Notes: generated by a model not told the origin, from the letters alone. Counted from the first letter of the stretch, positions 1 to 20,500 are shown. The stretch is 64,000 nt of DNA from Selaginella moellendorffii (GCF_000143415.4 NW_003314302.1:18065-82064); one strand, 5' to 3'. Numbers and translations are program-made.

Positions 1-539
1 AAAAATGCAAGTGCTCCTCAAAATAAAATGGTTATATAAACCATAACCTTACAACTTTGTTTATCAACTCTACGCTGGTAATGAAAACTCTGTACTTAAG
101 TTAACCAATTTCTATTAGATTGACATCAAAGGTTAGAATGTCTATGAAACGTGGATGACTTGGTTTTGAACTGGAATGAACCTGCTTCAAAACAAATTCG
201 GACCAAGCTTGCAAGTTTAATCCCACACTACCTTTGTTACGTGGCTTCAATGTTGATATCATTAACAAACTCCAATCATGGGCTTATAGGAATTGTGGTG
301 GTCAGTCTCTGCCCATTACTTACTCGCCCTAACTTACCTTCTTGATACTAAGTTTTCTTTTGATGACAAAATGAAAACGAATTCCCCTTGATGAACACTG
401 GAAAAGATCTCTTGTATTTTATTTATATTTTTTAACAGAGGAAAGGAGGTGACACTGCACTTTTTGAATCCTCAAATGAAATGGACATGTACCAAGAAGA
501 AGTAGAGCAATTCAGTATGCTCGCTCTTTGTAGTAAGCC

Positions 540-1085
540 ACGATGACAAATCCACAGCCTGAGCTGCCAAAGATCAGCAAATTGGTCCAGAATTATAGCT
601 GACATACCGGTCTTGTGTTTCCTACATTCCATGTACCCAAGAAAACACTGATATCATGCTCGGGTTCAGCTATTCTTGCATCTAAGTCCATTAAAACCTG
701 CAAATACATGACAACAACGAACATTTTTAAAAGTCAAGCAAACAGACTGATCACCTTCCCCGGCATTAATCTCTTCCCAGAAAGATCATACCACTTGGTT
801 TTTCCATCTTGACCACCTGAAATGAAACAGAGCAATAAGGTGGCACAAGGAGAAAAGACACCTTCCTCAGACCTCCCTTTTTATCGAGAAGATCAACAAC
901 ACGAACTTCCGTAGAAATCCCAAGCGAGTCTTCTCCTCCAAAACGTGTCTTAGAAACAATGTGTAACAGCAGAACTGCATTCTGCCCAACCACCCAAACT
1001 CGTCAGTAGAAAAAAACTTGCAAAGCTGCAAAAATTGTCCTTGATGTCAAAAGTGAAGCTCTGATTAACTCTAACGGATCCATTT
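540..1085 (-). pseudogene. Fragment of an inositol polyphosphate 5-phosphatase gene (N-terminal region plus start of catalytic domain)
   Basis: Spliceable exon ~608-697 reads VLMDLDARIAEPEHDISVFLGTWNVGNTRP, and the next exon reads AVDLSSWL. These match the 5-phosphatase GTWNV...DL..WL motif. An upstream exon has an in-frame TGA at 1003-1005. I could not find further catalytic exons. Confidence 0.55.
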
Positions 1086-1429
1086 TGCTCGATCGCTCCG
1101 ACCCGAATCTGGGAGCAGCCCAAAACAGAGAAGCAGTCAGGTAGCAGAGGAAAGAAAAAATAGGAATGTTGCACGTGAATGTGGGGACAAGACCTGTTTC
1201 TCTTGCCTGACCGCACCTGGCAATCCACTCTAGCATAGCAACCTAGCAGTCTTTCATTTGCATGTAAAAACCTCTGAAAACATAACGGAAGAAGTAGAAA
1301 TCTATCGTTTATAAAGTTAATTTGTAGTTTATAATTTTATCAACTGACTTTGAAAAGGTAGAACTCACCCAGCCAGCATATAATTCCCTTCACTTCCAAC
1401 TCCCACTGCTCAAAAAGCCACTGCAGATG

Positions 1430-4400
1430 CCCATCAAAAGTCAGCATGATTGGCTCTTAAGAAAATAAGATTTCCATTTTACCTAGGCAGTTGAAAGCCT
1501 AAGTGAGGTTTCTGGCTGCACATTCTTTTTGACAATGTTCCCAGTTTTGGAAAGCAGGAAATTACGATGGTTCTAACGCACAAACAATGCCAGGTCCTTG
1601 CTCATTATGACTGCTTTTTAAGGAAGTAACTCATTACGTGGTTTTGTAGCTGGAATGGACCACATACGAATGCATCCCAAATTCCTTCATTCTAACGCAA
1701 GAAGCCACAAGTGGGCTTTTGGTGGTAATTCAAATAGGCATATCACTGTTCCTCTTTTCTTTCTAATGCATGATCTTACACTTTTTGCAGCAATAGCAGA
1801 GCTGCTTGATAATGCACTCGACCAGACAACAAATGGAGTGACATTTGCCAACATAGATGTTCTCAAGAATCCAGTTAATGGCACGCCAATGCTTCTGTTT
1901 GAAGGTTTGTAAGACATTTTTTTTCCTTTTTTCTTTCTTTATGCAAGTAACATTGTATTTGTTAATTTAGACAATGGTGGTGGAATGACTCTTGATCATT
2001 TGCGACAATGTATGTCCTTTGGGTATTCTGTAAATGACACAGCCAGTAGAACAATTGGACAATGTAAGTGCCATCTTTTTTTTTACATTTTTTAATATTA
2101 TTTATACTACCAAATGGAAATGGTTTCAAGACAAGTACAACGCGCCTTGGTGCAGATGTCATTGTATTTTCAAAATCAAACACTGCAGTAGGTGACAGGT
2201 ATAAGAGTTGACTGCCATATTTTTCGCCACTTTATTTAACATTGTGTACAGATTTATTCAAAGTGTGGGATTACTCTCTTATAGCTTTCTCCGTGATACA
2301 GTGCAGCAAGATATTATAGTTCCAATGGTTTTGAGTGGATAAATTCTCTTAGATGTGTATTCATCACATTGTTCATATTTGCAGCTGAATTATGAAGGAT
2401 ATGGGCTTGAGTTAAAAGAGATCCATAAATGTACACATCAAGATTGGAAAATCATATGGACGTAATCACTAAATGGAGTCCTTATCAAAATGAAGAATCT
2501 ATTCATAGCCAAGTAAGTACTCTAGATCAATAATCTTAAGTTATGTGTCTCTACTATTCAAGTTCAAGAAAATTAATGACCAAGGGACAAGAATAATTAT
2601 CTATAATCTTTGGGAGAATGACGAGCAACAAATTGAACTAGACTTCAAATCTGATCCTCATGTATGTTTTATATTTTAAAAGTTTACTTTTCTGACACCC
2701 ATCAAGGATATCCGAATTAGAAACGGTCAACATGACATACAATGTGAAATGGCAAACAAATATTCCAGTATTAAACACTTTTTCCTGTACAAAAGTTCTC
2801 TACGGGTAAGAAAAAATTTAAAATACACTTTCTCATCCACTCAGGTTTGCAGGTATATATTTCAATGTTGTATTTGCATTTACCAGAAAACTTCAAGATC
2901 ACTCTTCGAAATCAAGAAGTTGAACACTCTGACATAAGGAGTGATGCAATGCATATAGAGCAATTTAATTTCAAGTTTCAAAATGATTTAAAAGTAGTTG
3001 TCCCCATTATTAAAATTTTCTTTGATATTTATTCAACTTTGAATGTAGATGTCTGCAAAAGTACACTTTTGGTACACACAACAAATAGATATACAAGGAT
3101 TTAATGTCTACCACAAAAACCGACTTATTAAGGTAACCAATCATTTAAAAAGATCATTTTTCTCATTTAATATATGACAGCCCTTTTGGAAAATATGGAA
3201 TTCATCACGAAAACAAGGGTGAGGTGTCTATGGCAAGTTTTACTATTCTACTATTAGTCTTTGATACATTCTTTAAGGTTATTTAGGAGTTTTGGAAGCA
3301 AACTTTGTGGAGCCCACTCATGATAAACAAGGATTTGAAAGAACACCTATTGTTCAACAATTAGAGTATCAACTGCAAATCATGCAGAAAAGATTATGGT
3401 TGGCTTGCTTGTTTATACCTTTTTATTAAGTTCTTTTTCTATACAGGAAGGACTTTCAGAAAAAGCAGACCGATAGACCAGTTGCTGATGTTGCTTTTGC
3501 TACCGAGAAAAAAAACATGATGCATAAAGAAAAAACTTTATACCAGTTTCAGAATGAACAACAAATAGAACATCTTCACGGTAGAACCTTTTAACACAAG
3601 AATGATGTTTCTTTGCTAAAATATATTCACAATGCTAATCATTGTCCTTAGATTGCGAGGACACAGAACATTTTCAAAGAAAAGCAAAGAAGGGATCGGA
3701 ATCTCACTTTGCTAATGAAATAGATAAGGTATTTGGTGTAAATTTGTGAGAAACATAACTTAAATTTAAGCTAACTCAAAATCTGATGATTTCCAGAATG
3801 AAAAATTACAAATGGCAGAGTATCTATTTAGAAAAAAAACAGACACTGAGATCACCTCCACATTGAAAGATGCTCAGCCAATACAGAACTTCCCTAAACT
3901 AGCTACATTGAGGGAACTATCACTGAAGTATGTATGAATTGTATCTATTACTGACTTTAAATTTCCATTTCAGAGCGGAGGCACATCTAAACATGGCAGT
4001 TGCTGAAAACCCAAAAGAATGTACTTGATCTTCCTCTAATCCCTCTCAGATGATTTTGTATTTTTTGAGCTGTATTTGTTATTATTACAGATTCAACAGC
4101 TGAACGGAATGATAAGTCTTATCAAGCGGTTGGCTATTCAATGAGCATGACAAATATTAAAATGAGATTGAGAAAAAGGAAAAACATTGTGTCTTACAGA
4201 TATTAAAAAATAGATTGAGAAAAAAAGTTTTAATCTATACTATGGTCCTCTCATCATTAATTAGAATGATGGTATAAAACAAATTCCAAATTGTCAGAAA
4301 ATAAACTAAATAAATCCAAATAATACAGCTCATCCAGCCAAACCAGATAGCAGCCCCCATGGAAGAGGAAGTCCATGTACGTATGGACGAGCTCCACCTG

Positions 4401-4968
4401 TGTAACAGACCACATGACATAGTTCCTCTCCTCAGGTGAGTGTGAAGGGTTTGGATTTGGCACACCAGCTTCTGCTTTAAAGGCAAAACCCAGCAGCAAA
4501 CTTTGTTGAAAGGGAACCAATTTCTTAGCTTTGACAAAGTAACACTGGCTTTTGCACCGTAATTTTTAAATATTACAGCTCTTCAATGATGGTTTGCAAA
4601 AGTTCCCATTACTCTACTTGGTAGATAGAAATATTGCTCTGCTGAATTACAATCATTTGGAACCTGCATAAAAAAAGGCTTACACTTGACTTTTGTGTTT
4701 CTGGATTACACAACATCAACTTCTAGCATACAAGACATGGAAACAAGCATTCTTTGTGCAAAAAAATCATCCAGCACAAGACCATTATCACAGTCATACA
4801 CTAGAAACCATGAGGAAACCAGGAGGAAGAGCGATACAGTATGGAAGAAAATGCGAGATAATTGACACAGTTCAAGCAGTGTACATGGATGAGAGCGGAA
4901 GAGGTGCAGCAGTACAAGGACTACCGTCCACAACAAGCCATATAGTTAGCAACAGCAATTTTGCATGA
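1430..4968 (+). pseudogene. MORC: MORC-family GHKL ATPase (multi-exon, disabled)
   Basis: Exons give FWKAGNY, HPKFLHSNARSHKWAFG, AIAELLDNA, DNGGGM, GNGFKTST.RLGADVIVFS, WSPY, GTRIIIYNLW, GFNVYHKNRLI, PFW and GVLEANFVEPTHDKQGFERT. Lesions: acceptor CAG>CAA (~2112), 1-nt frameshift (~2448-2451) and in-frame TGA (3220-3222). The 5' end and C-terminal exons after ~3400 are uncertain. Confidence 0.85.
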
Positions 4969-6295
4969 TTGTTTATGTCTGGTGCTGCTACAGGTCGAGC
5001 ATTTGACTCGGGGTACCAGGGTAGTGGAGTAGACTTGCTTTATGATGCCCGACTGAATTTTCACGTACCGTTTGTCTCTTCCAGCTTAACGGCTGGGGTA
5101 GGACGAGGGTGGTTCGAGAGTTACATCGGAATCAGGTGTGGATCTTTTACTTGTCGCTGGGTTCTAACACCTGTTATCTTCAGCCTTTAGATTTTTGAAA
5201 AGGTTTCCTTAACCGTGCAAGACAAGCACCGGGAAATGGAGATTACACAGGTCATCTCACATGCATGCCCTACTGTCTGGCTTATTGGATCGCATGCTTT
5301 GAGCAGCTGGTTGGAGCTGGTTGGATTCGTCTGATTTTCAGACAAAGAATCAGATAAAAAAAGAAAGAAAAGGAAAGTGTTTTTCCTGGGAGTTGTTTCC
5401 CTTCGCACACACTTGCCATATAAAAGCTTAAGAATGCATCAAGTACAAATAAACGAAGATCAAACTGTTTCGCTATGGATCAAAATGGTGTTCAGTAGTT
5501 GCGTTCATAACCAGCAAGTGTAGCTGGAATTCGAGTGTTGGAAGATGCATCAGACACAATTCTGTGCTTATCTGGACGCAATCCGTTTCCGTGGGCGTTG
5601 TAATCCTCTTTGGTCCTTATAACCTTGGTAACAAAAGGGAAAGACCTAGAAAAACGCCTGTGACTAGATATGACCATACTGTGTCGGTTCTCTGTGATTT
5701 TCAAGTCATGGAACTCCATCATCAGCGATTCATCCTTTTGCCGCCGGCAGAATCAGAATAGTAAAGCAAAGATTCCTTGCGTGTTATGACTACCTTCTTG
5801 GATGTGACGCGCTGCGCCTGGGATCCATTATGGGCGAACCACTTTGAGAAGTTTACAAAACCTTCACAGAACGTTTATGTCTCTGCTTCTGCAGGTGGCT
5901 TGGGATGAATCGACAAGGCCATGATTCATTTAAGTTTTCTAGAGCACTTGCTGGTGGGAAAGAGGAGCCGTGTATTGCCACAGTTGTTATTAAACATGAA
6001 GATCGGTAGATCGTGGAAGGGGCTTTTGGCCGGTAGTGTAGAATCAGATTTTTTTTTTTAAAAATGAACAAAAACTTAAGTTTCTCGAGAAGATAAACTA
6101 CTTTTGCCACTAACTCTTCTGGAGAGGGAGGAGGAAGATAAAGTCGTAATCTTTTTTCCCCACTAATACAAGAATAAATTTTATTATTTCAACCAATGCA
6201 TATGCATCAAGGCAGTGATAACAACGTTGCCAACGGTTTGATAAATGTGAACATTATATAGCAGATATCACAGAGAAACCCTATCGTGAACAATC

Positions 6296-8114
6296 ATGAA
6301 GTGCACAGATGATGGGATCAGAAGGGTCAAAGAAAATTCGAAAGAGGAACTCGTGTTGCGTGTGACGAATATAGATTCAAAGCCTGGTGCTCTGACCAAG
6401 AAGTTCTCTGTCACGGATGACAGAGAAATACTCGAGGCAATTGCATCACACCGAGTTTCAAGTTTAATAGATTCATGTGGTGCCCGTCTGAATTCGTTTG
6501 TAAAATTCCTAGACTACGCGTTCCTTGAGACAAATGGAAAACAGTAAGTGTATTTTCCTTTTGACAGAGCATTTTAAACACCAAAATATTCTGTAGGTCA
6601 TTGATTGTTTCGGATGCATGCTTCCTGGATGGTGGAGTATGGAAGCGCACACGCTCAAACCCTATCCTTCAAGATATGAAAGTGGTAAATCCTTTCTTTG
6701 GTTTTAATTCTAAAATAACTGCTACAATTGAACTTGCCAGGGACAAAAACGAGCCCAGGAGTCCATGGAAAAGGTATTTCACGACTAAACCAGTTTATTC
6801 AATTTGTTCCCTTTGATACAGGGAGAGAGCTCAAAAAAGGCCGTCATAAAAGAGGTGTTCATCAAAGAAATCAGTGACCGTTCTTACAGGTGGTCCTTCC
6901 GTGCAAGAGTCACACACAAGAACAAGTTGATACATTTCAACACGAAAAGATCTGGATGCATAATGTCATTTGACGTTGTCGATGTCCAGGGAACAGAGAT
7001 TAGAATTATTGGCTCCGACGATTGTGCCTTGGTTTTGTCAGATAAGATTGTACAGGGTATAGTGTATTCATTTTCTGGTAGTGGTGGAATACGACGTTCC
7101 AATCAGGCATACACACCATTTGAAGTGACATGGGAGATTCAGGCTAACAAAGGTATGGAGTTTACAGCTTTGGATGAGGATGCAACGTTCCCAAGAATTG
7201 TCTTGGCAAAAACAAGCATATTAAGTGCGTGTCAGAAGGAAAGGGACTCTTTTGTCGATGTGGTTGGTATTGTAATATGGATCGGTACAATTACAGTAAC
7301 ATCTCGTGACAGTGGAACTTTTGTGAAGAAGAGAACATTGTGTCTAGGTGATGATTCAGGCCACAGTGTTGATCTATGTCTCTGGGATTTAAAAGCAGAA
7401 GAAGAGGGCTCATATATACAGGAGCGGATAGACAGTGGAGTTCAGCCAATAATATGTGTCAAGGGTGGAAAGGTATCGGACTACAATGGTAAATCACTTT
7501 CAGCAATTGGTGTGAGCACCATTCTTATTGAACCGGAAATGGAAGCAGTGGCTGATTTGAGAGAATGGATGACATTGTACTACAATGTCACTAACTTCAT
7601 ACATTTGAGCACTTCATCATCCAGACAGACTGTTAGCTGCACCACTACTTTATCAGAGATATCAAACATGCAGTTAAAGGTGTTAGAGAGTTCCCCTATC
7701 TATAGAGTGATAGCTACTGTGAAGGAAATGAAGACAGATGAGTTTTACTATAATGCATGCATCAATGTCGTGAATGCACGGCAATGTGGCAAAAAAACTA
7801 CCCGAACAGCAGATGGTTGGTTCTGCAGTTATTGCAATATTGAGTCTGCCAACATGGAGTTCAAGTATGCTCTAAAGATGTGCATCGAGGATAGCAGTCA
7901 TGTGTGGGCCATTGCATTTCAAGAGGCTGCACAGGAAATAGTGGGAATGTCAGCAAAGGAACTAGCTACAATGCGAGATGAGAACTACCCTGCATTCTCA
8001 CTACTTATCGATGGTATCCGCTCAAAGATTTACAAATTCAAAATCTGGAGCAAGCTTGAAAAATACCAAGACATGGAGAAGCTAAGGTTCTATATACTTG
8101 GACTTGACACCTAA
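6296..8114 (+). CDS. RPA70/RPA1-like ssDNA-binding protein (Helitron-associated type), ~553 aa
   Basis: Exons 6296-6543, 6597-6684, 6741-6773 and 6822-8114 join in frame with GT-AG introns. OB-fold motifs WSFRARVTHK, VDVVGIV, L.DDSG.SV.L.LW and KVSDYNGKSLS are present, plus the C4 zinc ribbon YYNAC...QCGKK...WFCSYC. Confidence 0.88.
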
Positions 8115-8885
8115 GGTATGCAGATTCCATTCTAATCTTTTACATGTTGATATATTTATCTGTGTTTTGTTTTGTAGTTACATGGAACTTGCAAAAACAA
8201 ATAAAATAAAACACACCTCCTAGCAAACATCAGCTCTGTTTGATGGTTATCTGTAGCAAGAAAGGAATGTCAAGATACAAAAACTAAAAAAGGGAAAGAA
8301 CAACAAAAAATGATTCTCAAGTGGACAATAAATGACAAATGCATCAACTGTATCAGAATTTAGCATGTTATAATGAACAAACACATAGTCCACCAGAAAA
8401 TACAGTCATTTATACTTCAATACACATCACTTGCTTGCAGATGCAAAACCAGCAATTCTATACCAAAAATCCCTTTACCATACCATCCCATTAACTGCTC
8501 TTACCTCTGGAATGCCCAAATAATATACCAAATTGAGGAATATGATTGAGCCACCTCTTCATGTGTTGAATAATTCTTTTAAGCTTTGAGTCCAAGCTTG
8601 TATTATTCTATTCCAGTTAAACATTTAAGAAATAGTGTTTGGTTGCAATCACTAAGTAAAAACTAAATAAACCAAGTGCTTGTTACATATTGAACTTAAG
8701 TAAGTTTTAATAAATTGTTCTCTTTTTAGAATTAACATCTAACTATCCCAGCGGAGCTGGGTTCCCTGCTAGTAGTATCTACCATAAGTAAAATTGAATA
8801 TTCTAAAAATGGAATATGTGACACCGATGCCAAAATAGCAACTTTAAATAAAGAGTTTGATGATGATAGTCACATTCAGAATAAC

Positions 8886-8959
8886 TGGCCTATGCAGGTC
8901 TCGAACCTGCGACCTTGGCGTTATTAGCACCACGCTCTGACCAACTGAGCTAATAGGCC
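8886..8959 (-). tRNA. trnI-AAT: tRNA-Ile (anticodon AAT)
   Basis: Reverse complement is GGCCTATTAGCTCAGTTGGTCAGAGCGTGGTGCTAATAACGCCAAGGTCGCAGGTTCGAGACCTGCATAGGCCA: full cloverleaf with A and B boxes. Confidence 0.97.
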
Positions 8960-9461
8960 TTAGGCATTGATTAAACTCCTGTAATGTGGCATCTAAGTTT
9001 TTTCTAGAGTTAAAAAAATGAACGCTAGCTCCATTGTCTCTCCTCTTTTCGTGTTTGTGCCCTCCAGTCAATCGCTCAATCCTGAAACTCTGGCTGATTA
9101 GCTGTGCAAACAAAAGCGAATATTGAAAGAATGTTTCCTTCCAGCATTTTGACCGCTGAACAACAGATGCTGCACCAACTAATCAAACGTCCCAAAACCA
9201 TAATGGACATTACATTTTACCTTGAATGAGGGGAATGCACAATTATGTAATTAATCTTTTGCTTGATTTTGTTTATTAAAATGTTTTCTCCCCAATTATA
9301 ATTTAAGTCTGATGTAAATTTCTCCATGAAACAATGGGTTTGGCCGAAAAGGCTTTCATTCAATTAACCTTGATCTTTTCTTGAGTGGCGGCGGGCCACG
9401 TGGAAAAGTCTTAAAATTATTGATGTTGGTGTGACCTTGAGTTGTGCTGCAGGAGGCGACT

Positions 9462-10732
9462 ATGGCGGATTCTCAATACAAGCACATCCTTGTATTTTCA
9501 CATCCACTGCTTGGCCACGTAATTCCCATGCTCCTCATCAACCAGGACTGCTTGGAGTCGGTGACCAAGATCCACGAAGAGCTTGTAAGCAAAGGAGACT
9601 TCTCCAAAGAGGTTGGATCACATCAAGGCCATGTTTGAGGCTTGGCAAAACTCAGGCAAGCTTGCCGAGCAAGCCGGACAGAGCTCTCGAATCCAATCGC
9701 GTTCCAATCTCGTTTGTGCTGGCCGACTTTACGCTGAAGCGGAGCCAAGCTGTCGCGGACAAGCTCAAAGTTCCCAGAATTGCTTTGGCGATAATTGGTT
9801 CCCAGGAGCTTGCTTCATCTCTCAGGGTATTTACAATCCTCTCTCAGGTAAGAACTTCCAGGTTCTCGTCAAGAACTTCACTTTGATCCTTCTTTAGAGA
9901 TCGAGGACGACGATTTGGACAAGGCGATCGATCTCCGAGGGCCGAGGCTTTCCAAAGTTGAAGGTCTCCGACTGTCTTCCACGCATCTCACAGTTTCCAC
10001 TGGAAGCTCTCCTGCAGGCCATGGAGGTGGCAAAGATGGCCAAGATTCCTCCTTGTAAACTCTTGCTAGGAGCTGGAGGGCGAGGCATACAAATCCACGC
10101 TCGAAACACACAAGCTTTCAATCCATTTCGCGGGGCCGCTGCTTGCCTCGCCGGTGCTGGGATTGGATCACTACTGTTTGCAGTGGCTAGACACCACGCT
10201 CGGTGCTCTTCGCCTCGTTCGGATCCCACCTATAGTTTCCAGCGTCCGAGCTCGAGAATATCCTCCTGGGCATCGAAACCAGCGGGAAGAAATTCCTACT
10301 AGCCTTCCCGGACGGATGCAATTGCGGGCGATTTCTCTCCATGGCTGCTCTCCTTCTTCGATCGATACAAGAGCGACTCAAGTGATCTCGAGCACCGGCA
10401 GGGATTGATCGTTCCATGGGCTCCACAGCGAGCGGTTCTATTGCACCCATCCATTGGTGGGTAGTTTTTCACTCACTATGGATGGAATTCCATGCTAGAG
10501 AGCATCGCTGGAGGTGTTCCAGTGATTGGAGAAGCCAATCCTTGGAGATCAGTTTGGAGTGAGGAGGCTTGCATTGGATTGCTGGAGAATTGGATTCGAG
10601 ATTGAGGAGGACAAGAACAAGATCTTGAGCAAGGACGCCGTAGAAAGAGCAGTTAACGGCTTGTTTGGCAGTCAGCATCTTTATGTTAATGCCGCAGAGC
10701 TCAAACAATCACTAGAAAAGGTAGTCCAGTAG
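9462..10732 (+). pseudogene. UDP-glycosyltransferase (family 1) pseudogene
   Basis: N-terminus HILVFSHPLLGHVIPML. PSPG box [36 protein letters not shown] contains an in-frame TAG and frameshifts before KPILGDQF. Several further frameshifts. Confidence 0.85.
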
Positions 10733-10836
10733 TGCCCAGATTAATAAGGATTTCAAACATCTATAACAATAATGAATGTTTTGGCCCGGCTGGTTTTACA
10801 AATTAGAATGTTTATAAACAAGTGAAGCTTGACGGC

Positions 10837-13326
10837 TTAAATACGAGTCGAATCTCTTCCAAAAACAAACCGCTTTGTCCAATCGAAAAGAACAACAAAT
10901 CTAGTCCTCCAGCTGACTTGCTTGCTGTTTTCCACAAATTTCACACGAGAAAGAATGAGAAACGAGAAGATTTCGGGTGCGTAGGAAACGAAGTACCTGA
11001 GATACACCGAGTACCAAAGCCACATACTGCTTCGACCGATTGAAACCCAATCCCCTGGCAACTCCGCCGCTGCTTCTTCGCCACCAAGAGGTGCAAACAT
11101 CCCGAAATGCTTGTATCTGTTGTAAGGCGCGCGCGCGCGCGCGAGGAAGAGAGGGTGAGTCTAAAACAAAACGAAACAAGGAGAACTGTGGTACCTGAAT
11201 GGCTGAAATCTGTGACGCCCAGACGCTCGGACGCGAACTGGTCCCTCCGGGTGCTCCTCGCAGTAATCCATGTCGTTGAAACAGCGCGCCAAGTAAGTCC
11301 CTTGTTGTGCTGCAACCTGTGCATATACCACGATTCAACTCTTGGAAAAGCACAAAGAAAGAAAAACACAAATTGGTACCTGAGCAGTGGCGGGAAGGAG
11401 TTTTGTCTCGGAATCGACTTGAGCAAGTGCCTGCTTAAACTTCTCAATGTCGAGCTCCACTTCAGATTCCTGACCGAGCTGCTTTGCCTCGTGCAGTAGG
11501 CTCATAGTGTTGGCGAGGTGGTGGCTCTTGAGGTACATATCTATTTGAGGATATCTTCCCCTTATGGTTTCCATTGCTTCTTTGAACTCCTTTAGTGACA
11601 GGATGCCGTTTTGATCTTTGTCAGCCAGTTTAAATATGTACGTTATGTCTTCCTGCAAAGCTCACAAGGTAGTTTCAGCAAACGCCTTAGCGAAGAAACA
11701 AAACTTAAAGCATCATACCATGATCTTTCGCTGCTCAATGGTAGCACAGTCTCCTACTGCAACACTCCTTCGCAACCTCTTACTCTAAGCCACTCGTCGG
11801 TAGCCAAAACCCGCCTGTTCTTCTGTAAATTTATCAAAATGCAACAACAATCAAACCGGCGAAGAATTAAAACTTCTTATACCTGTCCAACTTGCTCCAT
11901 AAACTTCCTGATCAATGGTCGTGTTCCAATCCCCGTCGACCAAACAGCCAAGCTGAAAGGAATCATAACAGTTTGTCCGGATTTCTTTTCACTCGTCTCT
12001 ACTTCATTTTCCTTTACTGCATTAACGTGGCAGTTTGTTTGAACGTTTATTCCATCTCGTTTAAACTTGTCTTCCGCATATTTACTAATGCGTTCATCGA
12101 ACCTGTCGCAAGGTAGACAATAAAGGAGTTAAAGATGCAACATCAACAGAATGCAAAGAACTTACATGTTTAGTATGTGATCTCCCGACTGTATCAGAGT
12201 TATAGAGACTGCATCACGAGTAACAGGGTAAAGGTCCACCAAATCCTCGTACACAAGGTCATACAACTCCGCTGCAAACTCCACGCCAGTCGGGCCCCCT
12301 CCAACAACAACAAAGTTGAGCCGCGCTCGACGCTCGGCGTCCGACAGAGTGGGAATGCTGGCACTTTCAAAGCAATCCACCACGTTTTGATGTATTCTCT
12401 CGGCATCCTCAACCTCCTGCAAAGTATTTGAAGCGTCAATTCCAAAAACTATCCAGGTCCATACCTTCAAGAAATGGCAGTTCTCGGCAACTCCAGGCGT
12501 CCCAAAGGTGTTCGTCTGGCAGCCCACCGCAATGACCAGATAGTCGTAGTCTATCTTAAACTCAACGTGAGGCCTCGGCGGTTTCGTTTCAGCACAATCT
12601 ACGCACGTTACAGTCTTTGTGACGTGGTCGATGTTCGTGCATTCTGCTTCACAATACATAACATTTCGGTGTGCCTGTACGTAACGCAGCCAAGAAGAAA
12701 ATGATAAGGCCAAGAAAAAAGAAAAGAAACATAAGAAACAAGGCCAGTATACTCACAACTATTCTTCGAACAGGCTCCGTAATGCTCCGTGGTTCCAAAG
12801 TTCCAGCAGTGACGCTAGGCAGCAAGGGCGTGAAAACAAAATAGTTCCTGGGCGAGATGACAACCACGTCGTATTGCTTGTCATCCAAATCTTTCAAGAG
12901 ACTGACACCTGCCCAGCCAGTGCCAAGTATCACGATCTTCTTCTTTTTACCAGTACTTTTGTCTTGAGCCACAGCCAGCGGCGGATTCCACACATCGTCA
13001 CTGATCGCAATCGCAAGGCCTACAGCACTGGCAAGAAAATCCTTGTGAGACTTCTAAAATGAAGCACACAGAGGGAGAGATAGATCTTACCTTACTGCGA
13101 CGAGCGCCGCGGCAGCAAAACTCCACGATCTATGGCGCTCCTGCTGCCAGTACGATCTAAGCCTACTGCCGTGCAATAATCCTCGATCGGCGCCCGAGCA
13201 GAAAGATCGAATGCGATGCGAATTCTCTGCTACAAGATACCAAGGCGGCGAGTAACTTCCCGATCCAGCCCTACTCCATGTCCTGGAATGCAATGCCGAG
13301 CGCTGGAGGCGTCGTAGCGCGCGCAT
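10837..13326 (-). CDS. NDB: External alternative NAD(P)H:ubiquinone oxidoreductase, NDB type with EF-hand (multi-exon)
   Basis: KKIVILGTGWAG, SPRNYFVFTPLLPSVT.GT.E, VVVGGGPTGVEFAAEL, EF-hand ADKDQNGILSLKEF and C-terminal WTKRFVFGRDSTRI*. Confidence 0.93.
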
Positions 13327-13460
13327 TGTGGACCAGACTCCTCACATTCCCATCGTCAATGCCAAGAGCCCTAAATAAACCTAGCCTGACTAGATCTTAC
13401 ATCGACGGTGGAACTTATGCCCGCGAAGCACTAGCATATTCTACGAATATTTACAAACTT

Positions 13461-14831
13461 TTAAAGCTTGCCCATTTGGGCGGTATTGAAGTAGAAGTGG
13501 GAGAGTTTTCGCTGGAAGCCCGTGCTCATCGCTCGCGAGCCAAAGCCACTGTATTGTTTCTCTTTGCTCGCGATGCAAACTTCCAGGATCTTCTTGAGCA
13601 TGCTCCGGCTCTGGAAGAAATCCTGGGCTCCAAATTCTGACAATGACATCCACTGCAGATCGATCACTTATGTTAGATCATTTCTTTCTGGAGTAGAGAT
13701 TTATGATCTTACCTTGGCATCCTCGATTTCCGAGTCTTGCTTGGTTATCTCCGACGAGAGAGGTCTAAGAACGCACACGAAGAACAAGTCCGACTTCTCG
13801 AAGGCTACGTGATGACCCTGCCTAAAACCCACGACTTCTACGAACTCCGTGTCGATCTGGAAGATTTGTCAGGAAATACCAAAGAAAAAGCCGTGTCATT
13901 CACGAGTATGACTGTAATTTCAAAGCATTACCCCAGTTTCTTCTTTGACTTCTCGTATAGCACCCGCAAAAATGTCCTCGGCCTGTAATTAAACAAGACG
14001 GAAAACGTTTACTTTCTAATAGAGACCAAAAGACTAGTTTTCTACACCTGGTTGATCAATCCTGTAGGCATTTTCCAAATCCCTGTGCCTTTCAGCGGTC
14101 CATTTTTCTCCTGGACCGCGAGAACCTGCGAGAACACCGATGAGTATTGCTGACCCTTTCTAAAAAGGCGAGTTCTTACCTCGTCTCTGTCGTTCACGAC
14201 GAATGCTCCAATTCCAACTTGGTGTGAGGCATTCGCTGGCAGCGTGCAGGGAGAATCGGCAAGCCAGTGCGTGAGCATCAAATACGTTGGCTCCGCATGG
14301 TGGTATCTAAATCCTGCCTGTCCAGCCTCTAAGAAAAAATAGAACAATGTTTAAGAAGCAAAAGTACCTCAATCGCGTGTGGAACGAGAATGGATTTCTC
14401 TATGGGCAACTTGAGCCAAACACCTCTTTTTTGCTGAAAAATTCAAGCGTGAGATAGCTAGACAAACACTAAACAAAGAATGTAAACCAGACCTTCTCTC
14501 GCCAAGATGCAAGAGACCTCTCCAATCGATAAACGAAAGTTGGAACATCGGCTGGTAGGCTGTCGGGATCAACGATGACTCCATTGTACCTATCCTCGTG
14601 GACGCGAAAAACAATGGAGTCGGACGATCCTTGGTTTGATTTCAAGACGTCGTCCTGTGTGGAAACCTCGTCTTCGATCGGCAGAGGCGCCACTCCCAGA
14701 GAAGAATGCTCCGCGAGCGGCATTGCCGAGCTCGTCACACACAGCGTCCGATGCGTGCTCTCTTTCGGTGCTGTGTGACGCGTTCTTGGAAGCAACACTC
14801 GATTCGCTGCAAGATTTCGCCATCGATTCAA
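13461..14831 (-). CDS. Nudix hydrolase, plant NUDT2/NUDT8-like subfamily, with likely organellar transit peptide
   Basis: EDRYNGVIV, GVWLKLP, GFRYHHAEPTYLMLTHWL, LPANASHQVGIGAFVVND, WKMPTG and AIREVKEETG (Nudix box). Confidence 0.9.
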
Positions 14832-15220
14832 TCAGGAACAAGAAATTCACGAGAATCGGGCAATATTTCAGGAGAAACGATCCGGAGAACGATATCGAGA
14901 TAGAGATTTCTACCTGGAGGCGAGCTGACGATGGCGAACAGCGCGATGCGCGATAGATCTAATCGAGAGGGAGGCCGCGCTCCGCTCACCAGCATCATCC
15001 AAGACGCATTGCGCTCTAGCCCTCCCCAACGAGGGTTTTAAAAAAGCACGTTCTAGTACTTGACAAAAGGCATGATACTCGTGCTTATAAATTCGAATCT
15101 TTTGTACGCCTCTTTGTGAAGCATGACAAAGATATAGCGACCTCTTCTACTCAATTTCTAGCACAAGAACACAATCTCTCGGGAGTAAATTCATCACAGG
15201 GATATAGACACCATTGTCAG

Positions 15221-17342
15221 TTAGCTTTCGCTGGAGATTTGCGAAAATCCAAATCCAGCAAACGTTTCCTGTCAAGGCAAGATAAACACTCTTGAGCGAA
15301 CAGTGAACAAAACAGGGAATGCTGCTTACATTCTCATCGATGATCCCGTAAGCAACACAGTAGTGCTCCTGCAGTGGAATTGAGAAACTAGAATTCACAG
15401 GAGAAAAACTCTTTTACCTGCATGATATGCCATTCCTCAAACTCGTCAAAGATCTCCAGCCTCTCGATCCTGACAAAACGAAAAGCTCAAAGTTGGAAGC
15501 GCATAAAAAACTGAAAAACAGTGAGTTGATTACCTTCTCCTCTCGACAGGATCGATGTGACGATTGTAGATTTCGTCCATATCCACCGCCACTGCCCTCT
15601 GTCGGCGTTGAAAGAATTATTTAGTACTTCACAATTGGAACAAGGACGATTCACCTTCCATCCTGTTTCTAAGAACCGGTTCATCTTGGACTCGAGCGTA
15701 GATGTATCGTGAATTCCCAGTAAAGGACATCCACGGCTCTATGAATGTAAGATAGTTCATCAGTGAAAACGTTGCATCTCAGAACAAAGTTTTACCTCGA
15801 GATTTCGTATCATTTGTTGCCCAAAGGCGTCCTCTCCATGGATCTGTGGCTGAATTAGACGACGCAAAAACTGATAGCAAAGAGCTCACTTGTTCATATG
15901 CTACAAATACTGCATTTGAGAACTTGCTCGCGGCCCATCTTAAAAGTGCACGACTAGCCTCTGGATCCATGTATATCAAAACACATTCCGCAAGAATCAG
16001 GGTCGGTAGACTGCAGTTAAAAAAAAAAAAGACGTCAGCACGAGAAACAAGGCTCATCTTTGGGTCGAGAGAATTACCTTAAGTCCAAGTTCGCCTTTTC
16101 GCAGACAGCATCCAGCCTTGCGGTGTCTGTTAGATCACAAGCAAAGAGCTTGTAGTGCTCACTGCTTATTTCCCCTTTTTCTGCAATCCTATCCATTCAA
16201 TCGTAAACAAGATAAGAAAAAAAACCTGGCACAAAGTCAGCACAGAAACGCACCGGGGGCGAAGACTGGCGAATCAAGGTGTCTTGCCGTCTCTTTGCAC
16301 GCCGCAACGATCATAGCCTTTTTACTTGTCACCTCCAAGAAATCCACCTCCATAAAAACATCTGGAGCATTTTCTTCCTCCTGTTAATAGCGTGAGCTGA
16401 ACTTTCATAGCAATGAAAAAAAGCTCACCTTGAGTTGAAAGAACGTTGTATCAAAACCAGCTCCCAGAGAAACTATCTGCTTCCTTTTCGAACTGGGTTG
16501 AGAAAGGAACTGCATCAAGAGCGCCCGTATAGCAGCCCATCGAGCAAAGTATCCTGAAGAACAAAGTTATTGAAAATCGCAAAGAACCATCATACGCATA
16601 CCTCTGTTGATCAAGGGTGACCTCTTAACAGGTCTTCTCACGAAATACTGAACGTAGTTGTCTGTCATGTAGCCTTTCCTTACACAGGATCTAAAGTTGA
16701 ATCAAGTTAGCTCAGAAGGAACAGATAGTGGCTCTCATACGATTGAAACTTCAGCATCAAAAACTCAGCATAGCGTATACACAAACAAATCATAGAGCCA
16801 GAATGCTATCATCAGGTACAGGTTCACTCGCATTCATGGCCAGGCCATGTAGGAAGGTGTCCTAAGATGCTATTTTCTGTATCATCACTTGATAAAAAGG
16901 GGCTAATGCCGATGAAATGCTCGTCAGCTCAGGTCTCCAAAGTTTTCTACACGCTCTCTCGAGCGATCAGTAGAAAGCATCAAAAGGTTTTCATCAATCG
17001 AGCCTTATAAGAAAATGAAGAAGCTTTTCTCTGATTCAGAATTGCAGAAAGCCATCACAGACAAATCAGTCCAAGTGTTGGATGTGAAATCTGATTCATC
17101 ATCATCATCTCAAACAAGAAAGGAAAATCCACTCTTTCACTCTTCAGCACCAAATCTCTTCTCTACAAACACCATTCTGGTGTTCAGTAGAACGAAAGTT
17201 GTAGATTTTGATGCTCATCACGAGAGAAAATGACAGGGGGAGGGAGAGAGAAGAGATTTACTCACAGCTTGCTCGCGGAGGCATCGTCATTGGTCGCCTG
17301 GACCGCTGCGCGGCTACTGCTCGCGCGAGGAGGAGCCGCCAT
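15221..17342 (-). CDS. LCMT1: Leucine carboxyl methyltransferase 1 (PP2A methyltransferase)
   Basis: AVQATNDDASASKL, SCVRKGY, RRSPLINRGYFAR, QIVSLGAGFDTTFF, PTLILAECVLIYM, DAFGQQM and EHYCVAYG. The last exon reads ETFAGFGFSQISSES*. Confidence 0.92.
16701..16893 (-). ncRNA. Atypical long (~190 nt) box C/D RNA candidate
   Basis: C box GTGATGA (16888-16882), terminal D CTGA (16715-16712), flanking 7-bp inverted repeat ATCAAGT/ACTTGAT, 15-nt complement to 25S AGGTGTCCTAAGATG (16855-16869) and an internal hairpin. Confidence 0.6.
16919..17004 (-). ncRNA. Box C/D snoRNA, U55-like (25S guide)
   Basis: C box TTGATGA (16997-16991), D' CTGA (16970-16967), D CTGA (16932-16929) and terminal stem GCTCG/CGAGC. 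The D guide ACTTTGGAGAC pairs with 25S GTCTCCAAGGT with one G.U. Confidence 0.8.
17031..17110 (-). ncRNA. Box C/D snoRNA, dual guide (5.8S and 25S)
   Basis: C box ATGATGA, D' CTGA (17069-17066), C'-like TGATGG and D CTGA (17039-17036). The D guide pairs with 5.8S AATTGCAGAA and the D' guide with 25S CCAAGTGTTGGAT. Confidence 0.85.
17140..17225 (-). ncRNA. Box C/D snoRNA, U59/snR54-like (18S guide)
   Basis: C box GTGATGA (17221-17215), D' CTGA (17187-17184) and D CTGA (17147-17144). The D' guide is complementary to 18S AGAACGAAAGTTG (13 nt). Confidence 0.85.
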
Positions 17343-17564
17343 GGAGCACAAGCCCTAACCAAAAACCCTAGCTCAATCCTAGTTTAATACTATTATCTTA
17401 TCGATTAGAAGGAAATTTGGAAATAGAATAGGCTGCACAGAAATCATGATCCAGGGGAAATTATCATAGCTAGCTAGGGTTCTTCGCAACATTCGCTACT
17501 CGATCGCCGTGGCTAGCAGCTCAGCTTAGCGATTAGCTCTTGCATTGAGTGCGATCCAGCGGCG
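17343..17564. promoter_or_regulatory. Short bidirectional promoter LCMT1/IBR3 with telo-box-like motifs
   Basis: Head-to-head ATGs are 222 bp apart. AAACCCTAG at ~17363 and CTAGGGTT at ~17474. Confidence 0.6.
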
Positions 17565-20500
17565 ATGGCGTCGATGACATCCGACATGATCGAATCGGTG
17601 CAAGAAGCTCACAGATTGGATGAGATTTCGTTGCTGGATTATCTCCACCGATCTGTGGAAGGATTTCCACCGCGGCCGGTGAAGCTCACAGTCTCCCAGG
17701 TAAAAATCACTGAATTTCTTCTTCCTGGTGTGGTGATCGTTTTTTTAGTTTGGACACGGGCAATCCAATCCTACTTATCGGTTAAAAGCCGAGGGTGGCA
17801 ATGCTGTGAAGTTCTATGTTCTTCGCAAAAAGCCTCCTGGGAAATTGCTCCAGTCGGCACACGCTGTGGAGCGCGAATACCAGGTGCCTGTTCATAGCTA
17901 GTTCATGGTTTCTATCTTTGATTTTCTCTTCGTCTCGAAGGTTTTGGCTGCTCTTGGAAAAGAAGGAACTGTGCCAGTTCCCAGAGTTTTTTGCCTTTGC
18001 AACGATCCGAGTGTCATTGGCACGCCATTCTACGTTATGGACTATGTCGAAGGCCGCGTTTTCCTTGATCCTGGACTGAAGGTAAAATCTATATCTTGGA
18101 CTGACTACCACTTCGTGTTGGATCATCCAGAGCGTCAAGCCTGAAGAACGAAAGGAAGTTTACCAGGCCATGGGCAAAACGCTTGCTGCTATTCACAAAG
18201 TTGACGTCGATCGTGTCGGCTTGGGAAAGTTTGGGCGTCGCGAAAACTACTGTAAGCGACAGGTATGGCTTTGGTTTTGTTCTTCGTCGTTCCAATTCGA
18301 AATTTCTACTCGTCATGTAGATTGAGAGGTGGGCATCGCAATATGCTGCGTCCACGGCTGAAGGAAAGCCACCCGCGGAACCTTCCATGCTGAAACTTAC
18401 AATGTGGCTGAGAAGTAACGTGCCAGCTGAGGATGCTCGGAGAGACTGTGCGGGAATAGTTCACGGCGATTATAAAATCGACAATCTAGTTTTCCATCCA
18501 ACTGAGGTTTGTTCATCACTCTGTTTTATGTTCGTCGTTCATCGTGAATACTTCAGGCCCGCGTCCTGGCGGTTTTAGACTGGGAACTTTCGACTCTCGG
18601 AAACAGAATGTCCGATGTTGCTTATAATTGTATGGTACGTTTTTGCTGATTGTTACTAGTTGGATCACTGAAAAAATCGGTGCAGCAGCCATATGTTATA
18701 GACAACGGCAAGAGCGGCGGTCCGGGCTACTATGGCTTTGACAAAGGGGCTCCCTCCGATGGTCTACCCACACAAGAGGAGTTTGTTGCTACCTATTGTG
18801 CCCAAGGAGTAAGTCATATCTTTGTTTTGTTTTGGTCTAATGGTTGTTTAAAACTCAGGGAGCATCATGGCCTGGGCCTAACTGGAAGTTTTATCTAGCT
18901 TTGTCTCTTTTCAGGCTTGCTGCAATTTCTGCAGGCGTGTATAATCGGTTTTTGCTTGTGAGTTCTTTCAAATTTGTTTCAAAAAACCGACTTCGGGTTG
19001 ATTATTGTTGAAGGGAAATGCTTCGGGAGGGAAACGTGCAGAATCTAGTGGCAAGTTTGCTTGTTATCTAGCGTCATGTGCACTTCAGTTGATCAATGGT
19101 GGACCTATTATTTCTGATGTTCCACCTTCATTTGCGAAAATTGGTTAGTCGTCTTTTCTATTTCTTACTTCCTATCTTCTTAAGAGCCTGTTTTTGTATG
19201 ACAGGGAACAAGCATCCAGGTCTGTCTCCGTCGTCCAGAGTTTTACGGCTTAAAGAACAACTTGCGACTTTCATGGAAAAATACATTTACCCAAACGAGG
19301 AACTTCTATCCGCTCATGCGAAGACGGAAAAGAGGTGGACAGTCCACCCGCTGCAAGAAGAGCTAAAACATCGTGCTCAAGCCGAGGGCCTTTGGAATCT
19401 GTGGATCCCAGTAAGTGTGGCGTTTTTTATTTTCCTTTGCAATGTTTCTTACGGATTTTCCAGGCCGACAGTGCAGCAATGGCCTCCAAAATCTTGTTTG
19501 ACACGGACGACGCTCAAAACTTTGACAGGCTAGTTGGCGCGGGCCTCAGCAACCTCGAGTATGGACACCTCTGCGAAATAATGGGACGCTCGGTATGGGC
19601 TCCTGAAGTCTTCAATTGCAGCGCTCCCGACACTGGGAATATGGAGGTGACTAGCAATCTTAAATTCCAACAGAGAGAAACGTGACCGAGGTTTTTGCAG
19701 GTTTTGTTACGATACGGCAGTCCAGAGCAGCAAAAGGCATGGCTAAAACCTCTTCTCAAGGGAGAAATACGGTCAGCTTTTGCCATGACGGAGCCTAATG
19801 TTGCTTCTTCGGACGCGACGAATATCGAGTGCAAAATAACAAGGTTCTTTTTCTGAAGTTGCATGTTTTGTTTTATACTTGAACCATTAAACTCCAGGGA
19901 TGGAGAACATTATATCATCAATGGACGAAAGTGGTGGACAAGCGGAGCTATGGATCCTAGATGTCGCATTTTGATAGTCATGGTTAGTACGACCTTCATT
20001 TTGGTAGTCTTAAGTTTTCTGTGCTTTCTTCTGTTAACAGGGAAAGACTGATGTCAATGCGCCCTTGCACAAACAACAGTCTATGATCCTCGTTGACATC
20101 AAAACTCCTGGCGTAGAAATCATACGACCGCTAACTGTCTTTGGCTACGACGATGCCCCGCATGGACATGCCGAGGTGCTTTTCAAAGACGTGAAAGTTC
20201 CTGCGACGAACATCCTATGGGCCGAAGGACGTGGTTTCGAGATTGCCCAAGTATTGATTCCTTCTAAGAAGTTTATTCATGTCTAAAAACATTTATCCTC
20301 GCAGGGAAGACTTGGGCCGGGACGACTCCACCATTGCATGCGCTTGATCGGATCCGCTGAGCGAGCTTTGGAGCTGATGGTTCACAGAGCATTGCAACGA
20401 AAGGTGTTTGGAAAGCTCATTGCTCAACAAGGAGCGTTCTCTTCGGAGGTTTCCCAGGTAAGCTTTTCACGTCGTTTTTTTCCAGACTGAGCTCTCTTGT

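What the first reader, a model, noticed from the sequence alone, without database searches (positions are those of the whole stretch)
1..8772. Helitron apparently carrying a near full-length MORC silencing-ATPase gene next to its RPA70
Seen: a hairpin plus CTAG|T Helitron 3' end 0.65 kb downstream of an intact RPA70-like gene, and an intron-retaining MORC copy upstream on the same strand. Established: plant Helitrons encode RPA70-like proteins and capture genes at DNA level, and MORC GHKL ATPases are TE-silencing and chromatin-compaction factors. Inference: a Helitron family has acquired a silencing factor. Intact siblings could use it as an anti-silencing decoy or a self-regulation module. 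I know of no described MORC-bearing Helitron but cannot search.
Basis: partly seen in the sequence, partly recalled or inferred. Interest (0 to 1): 0.85.

Follow-up and report, generated by a model that had tools for sequence, protein, structure and literature searches.

The report
Helitron carrying a captured MORC gene
The first 8.8 kb of this spikemoss (Selaginella moellendorffii) window are the tail of a large rolling-circle transposon family that carries, beside its own RPA70-like gene, an intron-containing copy of the plant's transposon-silencing gene MORC7. The copy in this window is broken, but the family seems to have kept the gene readable for a long time.

Summary
Window 1-8772 is the 3' part of a multi-copy Helitron of Selaginella moellendorffii. 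A 6-bp hairpin (8747-8761) and CTAG|T (8769-8773) mark the exact point where four copies at unrelated loci stop being alike.

A sibling copy (L006) has a decayed Rep/PIF1 helicase and a SUKH/F-box gene upstream of the same cassette.

The MORC cargo has 14 exons with short introns retained, which shows capture at the DNA level. Its closest relative is host MORC7 (65.6% identity, sister in a tree).

All five copies examined are broken. The window copy has a 940-bp 5' deletion, a lost splice acceptor, a 1-nt deletion and a TGA stop. The consensus of the four young copies is nevertheless an open 523-codon frame with every GHKL ATPase motif. Its changes also avoid sites conserved across plant MORCs. 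Past purifying selection is therefore likely, but it is inferred and not proven.

The window's RPA70 gene is intact. Three RNA-seq runs show almost no expression. No intact sibling was found, and the anti-silencing decoy idea is untested.

This scan had already noted the same family on other DNA of this genome. I found no paper describing it.

The parts
1..8772 (+). 3' part of a large Helitron copy. It continues to the left across a 1431-N assembly gap that abuts window position 1.
   Evidence: The window equals L001 from position 3039 at 100% identity, and the gap is L001 1608-3038. L004 is colinear from window 1 to 8772 and bridges the gap. L006 is colinear from window 1 to the 3' end, and L002 from 1254 to 8772.
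432..1228 (-). Unknown cargo gene on the minus strand (annotated product 152 aa). It is conserved in copies L004 and L006.
   Evidence: Gene calls at L001 3470-4121, L006 8553-9204 and L004 2370-3704. Its ORF pieces gave no Pfam match.
1254..1254 (+). Point where the 5'-truncated copy L002 begins (TCATTTGCATG...). It is not preceded by A in L002, so it is probably a truncation and not a true 5' end.
   Evidence: Boundary alignment. L004 and L006 continue upstream of this point.
1531..1532 (+). Junction of a ~940-bp deletion private to the window copy. It removes the MORC upstream region, the start codon and about 70 codons of exon 1.
   Evidence: L002 3625-4570 and L004 3409-4351 hold the extra segment. 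That segment encodes MGGDEELTARG...KKPKI.CMPADFLEFFP, which is homologous to the MORC7 N-terminus.
1531..3580 (+). MORC7-derived cargo gene, exons 1-14: 1531-1593 (remnant), 1650-1724, 1791-1904, 1971-2063, 2114-2198, 2252-2327, 2385-2512, 2563-2661, 2707-2805, 2853-2993, 3049-3132, 3181-3223, 3278-3398, 3447-3580. It covers the GHKL ATPase and S5 domains. In this copy it is a pseudogene.
   Evidence: Spliced alignment to P0020 with GT..AG introns of 45-70 bp. Lesions in the window: acceptor AA instead of AG at 2112-2113, a 1-nt deletion at 2452, and TGA at 3220-3222.
3652..4028 (+). Putative tail exons of the cargo MORC (3652-3728, 3797-3927, 3974-4028, ending in TGA). This is my own model and has only weak similarity to MORC7.
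   Evidence: The frames stay open across canonical splice sites in the consensus. The only similarity is a tblastn match of E 8.8 to MORC7 residues 561-584.
4130..4230 (+). Possible decayed remnant of the MORC7 coiled-coil exon. It contains a stop codon in all young copies.
   Evidence: tblastn match to P0020 698-731 at 38% identity, E 1.4, in K/E-rich sequence. This is weak evidence.
4231..6295 (.). Spacer between the MORC and RPA70 genes. It is conserved among copies and no recognisable gene was found in it.
   Evidence: No Pfam matches for its ORFs, no usable Atlas hit, and no gene calls there.
6296..8114 (+). Helitron RPA70-like gene, apparently intact: exon 1 at 6296-6543, a small middle exon near 6600-6684 (boundaries uncertain), and the main exon at 6810-8114.
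   Evidence: Pfam REPA_OB_2 and Rep_fac-A_C. Eight relatives of 93-99% identity on other S. moellendorffii scaffolds. Gene models mapped by tblastn. The main exon is intact only in the window; L002, L004, L006 and L003 each carry one private stop.
8747..8761 (+). Helitron 3' subterminal hairpin (6-bp stem, 3-nt loop).
   Evidence: DNA fold of -6.1 kcal/mol. Conserved in L002, with one stem mismatch in L004 and partly deleted in L006.
8769..8773 (+). Helitron 3' end CTAG followed by the host T.
   Evidence: Similarity to L002, L004 and L006 ends exactly here, and the flanks beyond are unrelated.
8886..8959 (-). Host tRNA-Ile(AAT) gene in the flank, 114 bp beyond the element.
   Evidence: ARAGORN and Rfam tRNA at 66.8 bits.

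Best explanation
Shown: window 1-8772 is the 3' portion of one copy of a recently active, large Helitron family of Selaginella moellendorffii. The family's cargo, in 5'-to-3' order, is a RepHel, a SUKH/F-box gene, a second OB/zinc-ribbon gene, a small minus-strand gene, a MORC gene and an RPA70-like gene. It ends in a hairpin plus CTAG inserted before a T.

Shown: the MORC gene was captured as genomic DNA, introns included, from the lineage of the host gene MORC7. It has since travelled with the element. In this window it is dead (5' deletion, lost acceptor, frameshift, stop), while the RPA70-like gene is still open.

Inferred, about 60%: along the element's master lineage the MORC frame was kept open by selection while its sequence evolved fast and its C-terminal coiled coil was lost. 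Individual insertions then decayed neutrally, mostly through C-to-T changes typical of methylated DNA.

Speculative, about 15-20%: a product with the ATPase head but no coiled coil could bind host MORC heads and blunt silencing. Alternatively it could act on the element's own chromatin.

The confidence given (0.8) is for the two parts marked as shown.
For: Mobility as a unit:
- L002, L004 and L006 are 96-98.5% identical to the window through MORC, spacer, RPA70 and terminus.
- All of them end at CTAG|T with unrelated flanks.
- RPA70 relatives of 93-99% identity lie on at least eight scaffolds.

Helitron identity:
- The 3' end is canonical.
- L006 has one reading frame holding the Rep C-terminal part and a PIF1 helicase (Pfam 7.9e-37) about 8 kb upstream of the cassette, followed by a SUKH-domain gene.

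Capture from MORC7:
- The gene has 14 exons with 45-70-bp GT..AG introns.
- The consensus is 65.6% identical to MORC7 over 520 aa, including the poorly conserved N-terminus, against 50-54% to other plants' MORCs.
- In a maximum-likelihood tree it is sister to Smo MORC7 (support 92/81) on a long branch.

Past selection:
- The consensus of the four young copies is an open 523-codon frame with the ELLDNALD, DNGGGM and GQYGNGFKTS motifs intact.
- By contrast the old copy L005, at only 7% exon divergence, already has 8 stops, 6 frame-breaking indels and 3 splice-site losses.
- The cargo differs from MORC7 at 14% of sites that are at least 95% conserved in 60 plant MORCs, against 32-64% at other sites (Fisher p 1.8e-13).

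Neutral decay after insertion: each copy has mostly private lesions.
Against: - Every one of the five MORC copies examined is broken.
- Among the young copies, MORC exons diverge no more slowly than introns (1.4-3.4% against 1.2-1.9%).
- Between L005 and the young consensus, exons (7.1%) are no better conserved than introns (5.6%). The dN/dS of 0.46 there is ambiguous, given the transition bias and the exclusion of stop codons.
- The long tree branch shows strongly relaxed constraint.
- Changes at 14% of near-invariant sites are many for a working ATPase.
- Two lesions (acceptor AA and the TGA/TAA at codon 438) are shared by the window and L006. Copies defective in MORC may therefore still have transposed.
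- Three RNA-seq runs gave 12 reads out of about 27.6 million records read, and no splice joints were reported.
- I could not obtain host MORC7 DNA, so no codon-level test against the parent gene was possible.
- RepHel in the window's own copy lies beyond an assembly gap and was not seen by me. In L006 the link between RepHel and the cassette crosses two N gaps.
Confidence: 0.8

Rival explanations
1. The MORC is a passive passenger. It was picked up like the thousands of gene fragments in maize Helitrons and never had a function for the element. The open consensus frame would reflect a fairly recent capture from a diverged host paralogue that is not annotated, has been lost, or sits in an assembly gap.
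For: - All five copies are broken.
- There is no exon-versus-intron conservation among the Helitron copies.
- RNA reads are negligible.
- The branch is long.
- Another MORC7-like fragment, P0019, exists elsewhere in the genome, so MORC7-derived pieces do get copied around.
Against: - The MORC7 search, which could see proteins of 417-1326 aa, listed no other S. moellendorffii protein among its best 120 hits, and the best foreign hit was only 55% identical.
- The search for shorter models found only Helitron-borne ones.
- The cargo was already in Helitrons before the split of L005 from the young copies.
- At 34% amino-acid divergence from MORC7, an unselected frame should carry many stops and indels, judged against L005. 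The consensus has at most one, at a CpG-type CGA/TGA site.
- Substitutions avoid conserved sites.
Confidence: 0.3
2. MORC plus RPA70 (window 1254-8772) is a separate non-autonomous Helitron lying head-to-tail behind a different, RepHel-bearing Helitron. On this view it is not the tail of one giant element.
For: L002 starts exactly at window 1254 with TC (TCATTTGC...) and ends at the same CTAG, with nothing of the upstream cassette.
Against: - The base before the L002 start is G, not the A expected at a Helitron 5' junction.
- No hairpin-plus-CTRR 3' end lies immediately before 1254 in the window (reading).
- L004 and L006 are colinear with the window across 1254, far upstream and at different loci. 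The upstream genes therefore move together with the cassette.
Confidence: 0.08
3. This is a host MORC locus that merely lies beside a Helitron remnant, single-copy and syntenic.
For: None after testing. Introns and host-like exon structure alone would have allowed it.
Against: The same MORC, spacer, RPA70 and terminus occur at four or more loci with unrelated flanks. The true host gene MORC7 sits on other scaffolds.
Confidence: 0.01

Closest known systems
Plant Helitrons encoding RepHel plus RPA70-like proteins (Kapitonov and Jurka type; summarised in PMC9033089)
   Same: 3' hairpin about 11 nt before a CTRR end, insertion before T, a PIF1-type helicase in a sibling copy, and an element-borne RPA70-like gene with the DBD-B and DBD-C domains.
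   Different: The cargo is much larger: F-box/SUKH gene, second OB gene, small unknown gene and MORC. The 5' end and Rep domain of this copy were not seen.
Helitron gene capture at the DNA level (maize and other plants; reviewed in PMC13317346)
   Same: Host gene sequence with its introns sits inside the element and is amplified with it.
   Different: Typical captures are fragments or chimeras that decay at once. Here 14 consecutive exons (about 70% of the protein) were taken, and the family consensus still reads as one open frame despite 34% divergence from the parent. That review mentions neither MORC nor Selaginella.
Host MORC GHKL ATPases (Arabidopsis MORC1/6/7; S. moellendorffii MORC7, XP_024528529.1)
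   Same: GHKL ATPase and S5 fold, all ATP-binding motifs present in the consensus, and the same exon structure as expected from a DNA copy.
   Different: No recognisable C-terminal coiled coil, a fast-evolving sequence, location inside a transposon, and every sampled copy broken.
Transposon counter-silencing devices: VANC of VANDAL/Mu elements (PMC5735166) and TART-A's captured nxf2 fragment in Drosophila (PMC7785250)
   Same: A mobile element carries something aimed at the host's silencing machinery. TART-A likewise captured part of a host silencing-pathway gene.
   Different: No anti-silencing activity has been shown here. VANC is not derived from a silencing gene. TART-A acts through antisense small RNAs from a fragment and not through a maintained protein frame.

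Membership tests
Helitron (rolling-circle transposon) | 3' terminus: short GC-rich hairpin about 10-12 nt upstream of a CTRR end | tested here: met
   Hairpin at 8747-8761 and CTAG at 8769-8772. The same end is present in L002 and L004 and, with a 12-nt deletion, in L006.
Helitron (rolling-circle transposon) | Several copies at unrelated loci sharing exact ends, inserted before a T of an AT site | tested here: met
   Four loci end at CTAG followed by T and then unrelated sequence. The A on the 5' side could not be seen.
Helitron (rolling-circle transposon) | RepHel protein (HUH Rep plus PIF1-like helicase) encoded in autonomous members | tested here: inconclusive
   Not in the window, because an assembly gap lies to the left. 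Sibling L006 has a Rep C-terminal part plus PIF1 helicase frame (Pfam PF05970, 7.9e-37) with 5 in-frame stops upstream of the same cassette, across N gaps. An earlier scan note reports an intact RepHel 3.3-13 kb left of this window; I did not verify it.
Helitron (rolling-circle transposon) | 5' terminus TC after a host A | not testable with these tools
   The 5' end lies outside the window and the fetched loci. The L002 start (G|TCATTTGC) looks like a truncation.
MORC GHKL ATPase | GHKL ATPase domain plus MORC S5 domain | tested here: met
   Precomputed Pfam HATPase_c_3 and Morc6_S5 on the L002, L004 and L006 gene models. Exon-by-exon alignment to MORC7.
MORC GHKL ATPase | ATP-binding motifs (N box ExxxNxxD, DxGxG, GxxGxG) retained | tested here: met
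   ELLDNALD, DNGGGM and GQYGNGFKTS are present in the family consensus and in the window's exons.
MORC GHKL ATPase | Uninterrupted coding sequence (a functional gene) in this window | tested here: not met
   A 940-bp 5' deletion, acceptor AA at 2112-2113, a 1-nt deletion at 2452, and TGA at 3220.
MORC GHKL ATPase | C-terminal coiled coil used for constitutive dimerisation | tested here: inconclusive
   There is no significant match to MORC7 residues 525-758. The only candidate is a K/E-rich match of E 1.4 that contains a stop. No coiled-coil prediction was run.
RPA70-like ssDNA-binding protein | OB-fold DBD-B and the zinc-ribbon-containing DBD-C | tested here: met
   PF16900 at residues 145-242 and PF08646 at residues 301-432 of the 436-aa ORF.
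RPA70-like ssDNA-binding protein | N-terminal DBD-F and DBD-A of cellular RPA70 | tested here: not met
   No Pfam match for exon 1 (6296-6547) or for residues 1-140 of the main ORF. This is typical of element-borne RPA70-like proteins, but they may simply be too diverged to detect.

The most novel reading that the evidence does not exclude
Master copies of this Helitron family express, or recently expressed, a fast-evolving MORC that keeps the ATPase head but lacks the coiled coil. Such a protein could heterodimerise with host MORC7-type proteins and weaken heterochromatin compaction at the element. That would make it a transposon-encoded anti-silencing factor built from the host's own silencing gene.
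Probability: 0.15. Interest if true: 0.9.

Novelty: new variant of a known kind. Interest (0 to 1): 0.6.

Why it matters
Helitron gene capture is well known, but captured pieces are normally dead on arrival. This case differs in two ways: the captured gene is a core transposon-silencing factor, and the family consensus keeps a 523-codon spliced frame despite deep divergence from the parent gene.

If that reflects selection, it would be a rare case of a DNA transposon domesticating a host defence gene. It would also give a concrete, testable system for transposon counter-defence in an early-diverging vascular plant.

There is a practical point too. Published counts of MORC genes in S. moellendorffii (six in PMC6048995) may include Helitron-borne pseudogenes.

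Tried and rejected
- Self-comparison of 1-9300 against the whole window found no second copy in the window.
- Exact-protein look-ups failed for P0001, P0004, P0006, P0008, P0292 and the MORC7 partial model P0346. I therefore could not extend the window's own locus to the left, and I could not obtain host MORC7 DNA. No codon-level dN/dS against the parent gene and no intron comparison for dating the capture were possible.
- Pfam on ten ORF pieces (eight from the window's upstream minus-strand gene and spacer, two from L004's second OB gene) gave nothing. An Atlas search of one spacer ORF gave nothing.
- The look-alike search in the scan's notes came back blank.
- dN/dS between the old copy L005 and the young consensus was 0.46, but exons were no better conserved than introns. 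I judged this uninformative, because L005 itself decayed neutrally.
- I considered that the TC at 1254 might be a true 5' end. I rejected this because the flank is G in L002 and other copies run colinear across it.
- I did not predict a structure.
Full report
**Where the window is.** The RPA70-like ORF finds eight relatives of 93-99% identity, all from Selaginella moellendorffii. Locus L001 (GL377606.1:15027-36287) is 100% identical to window 1-18223, with an offset of 3038. A 1431-N assembly gap (L001 1608-3038) ends exactly at window position 1.

**The observation.**
- The ORF at 6804-8114 carries Pfam REPA_OB_2 and Rep_fac-A_C. tblastn of annotated models adds an upstream exon at 6296-6543, which is also conserved (48%) in a 51%-identical RPA of another Helitron family.
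- The terminus is as described: hairpin at 8747-8761, CTAG at 8769-8772 and T at 8773.
- The MORC copy is real. With host MORC7 (P0020, XP_024528529.1, 758 aa) as guide, tblastn and a junction search give 14 exons at 1531-3580, separated by GT..AG introns of 45-70 bp.

**Is it one mobile unit?** Yes.
- L002 (GL377711.1) matches window 1254-8772 at 98.5%.
- L004 (GL377565.1) matches window 1-8772 at about 97% and also bridges the gap.
- L006 (GL377600.1) matches window 1 to the 3' end at 97-99%.
- L003 holds a partial copy. L005 (GL377615.1) holds an older copy of about 90% identity.
- In L002, L004 and L006 the similarity stops at CTAG|T and the flanks are unrelated. L006 has a 12-nt deletion inside the terminal region.

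**Is it a Helitron?**
- The 3' end is canonical.
- L006 carries, about 8 kb upstream of its MORC and on the same strand, one long frame holding the end of Rep and a PIF1 helicase (Pfam 7.9e-37). It has Walker A and B motifs and five in-frame stops.
- A SUKH-domain gene follows on the opposite strand, then a second OB/zinc-ribbon gene, the small minus-strand gene, MORC and RPA70.
- This matches an earlier scan note (s1-339338) of an intact RepHel with F-box and B3 genes 3.3-13 kb left of my window.
- The 5' end was not seen. L002 begins at 1254 with TC but after a G, and other copies run straight across that point. I read L002 as 5'-truncated.

**State of the MORC.**
- I aligned five copies and took the majority of the four young ones. 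The result is an open 523-codon frame, except for one CGA/TGA site that differs among copies. All splice sites are canonical, and the ELLDNALD, DNGGGM and GQYGNGFKTS motifs are intact.
- Every real copy is broken:
  - Window: 940-bp deletion of the 5' region and about 70 codons, acceptor AA at 2112-2113, 1-nt deletion at 2452, TGA at 3220.
  - L002: one stop.
  - L004: four stops, a donor change and a 2-nt deletion.
  - L006: three stops, the same acceptor change, and a 20-nt deletion that removes the exon 14 acceptor.
  - L005: eight stops, six frame-breaking indels and three splice-site losses.
- Nearly all the stops are CAA, CAG or CGA turned into TAA, TAG or TGA. That is the signature of deamination of methylated cytosines.
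- After exon 14 the frame can be continued through three putative exons to a stop at 4028. Similarity to MORC7 is lost there. The coiled-coil region has at best a decayed remnant near 4130-4230.

**Origin of the MORC.**
- The consensus is 65.6% identical to MORC7 over 520 aa, including the non-conserved N-terminus. It is 50-54% identical to MORCs of other plants.
- In a maximum-likelihood tree it is sister to Smo MORC7 (92/81) inside a Selaginella clade (96/95). Its branch is very long (1.43, against 0.13 for MORC7).
- A search with MORC7 listed no other S. moellendorffii protein of comparable length among its best 120 hits. A search with a Helitron MORC model found only Helitron-borne models.

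**Was it kept by selection?** The evidence is mixed.
- Against: young copies show no exon conservation (exons 1.4-3.4%, introns 1.2-1.9%). The same is true between L005 and the young consensus (7.1% against 5.6%; dN/dS 0.46, ambiguous).
- For: L005 shows what 7% of unselected change does to this gene, namely 17 disabling lesions. The young consensus is 34% diverged in protein from MORC7, with most of that on its own branch, yet it has none or one.
- For: differences from MORC7 fall on 14% of sites that are at least 95% conserved in 60 plant MORCs, against 32-64% at other sites (p 1.8e-13).
- I conclude that the frame was under relaxed purifying selection for much of its history. My tests cannot tell whether that selection acted inside the element or in an unsampled host paralogue before a later capture. 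L005 does show that the gene was already Helitron-borne before a 7% split.

**RPA70.** The main exon is open only in the window. L002, L004, L006 and L003 each have one private stop. RPA exons diverge somewhat less than the rest (0.4-2.3%).

**Expression.** Three RNA-seq runs carrying the species label gave 2, 6 and 4 reads on 1532-7500. About 9.2 million records were read per run, roughly 12% of each run, and no splice joints were reported. The element is close to silent in those samples. This does not exclude expression elsewhere.

**Literature.**
- Full-text searches for Helitron with MORC, and for Helitron with Selaginella, found no description of a MORC-bearing Helitron.
- A 2026 review of gene capture in plants mentions neither MORC nor Selaginella.
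- The plant MORC family survey counts six MORC genes in S. moellendorffii without noting transposons.
- Within this scan, the same family had already been noted on other pieces of this genome (s1-341403, s1-355750, s1-418582). One follow-up there reached the same reading: broken copy, long kept readable.

**Verdict.** The observation and the core interpretation stand. This copy is a decayed member, the functional idea is untested, and the family-level phenomenon is unusual and worth a proper genome-wide and codon-level analysis.

Noticed in passing
window 8886-8959 (-): A tRNA-Ile(AAT) gene lies 114 bp beyond the Helitron 3' end, so the element inserted close to a tRNA gene.
   Followed up: no
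window 16730-16799 (-): Rfam U54 box C/D snoRNA match (43.3 bits, gathering score 40) inside what the annotation calls an LCM (LCMT1-like) gene. The scan has already noted this separately (s1-430308).
   Followed up: no
L004 784-1835 and L006 6986-8103 (+); in the window's own copy this region mostly falls in the N gap left of position 1: A second OB/zinc-ribbon gene (CxxC...CxxC, no Pfam match) sits upstream of the MORC in the same element. It may be a second, highly diverged RPA-like cargo gene.
   Followed up: partly
P0019 (XP_024521937.1, 'MORC4', 160 aa, a 342-kb scaffold): A chimeric MORC7-like model. It is 86% identical to MORC7 residues 100-184 and 62% identical to residues 397-461, with the middle missing. 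It may be a second, independent MORC7-derived fragment elsewhere in the genome.
   Followed up: partly
L005 8912-9753 and 13740-21756: In the older copy (about 90% identity), two ORFs whose sequence looked to me (from memory) like the N-terminal part of Helitron RepHel proteins lie directly upstream of the MORC; Pfam gave them no match. If they are RepHel remnants, this copy would be an internal-deletion derivative. The element is also split by an ~8-kb insert encoding reverse-transcriptase-like and integrase-like ORFs (my reading of the translations), probably an LTR retrotransposon.
   Followed up: partly
L003 10001-18819: The annotation fuses a decayed RPA70 copy of this family with DUF1823 and fumarase-like pieces into one 982-aa 'protein' (P0014). 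This is an annotation artefact caused by the transposon.
   Followed up: no
MORC exons of all copies: About 15 of 17 premature stops are C-to-T changes (CAA, CAG or CGA to TAA, TAG or TGA). Two sites (consensus codons 319 and 438) look like recurrent CpG decay in several copies. This is consistent with heavy cytosine methylation of the family.
   Followed up: partly
run X1 (organism A), contigs on window 1532-7500: A run with a different organism label holds contigs 95-99% identical to parts of the cassette. They include C instead of T at 3220, which is the unbroken CGA codon. The family may therefore exist in another accession or species.
   Followed up: no
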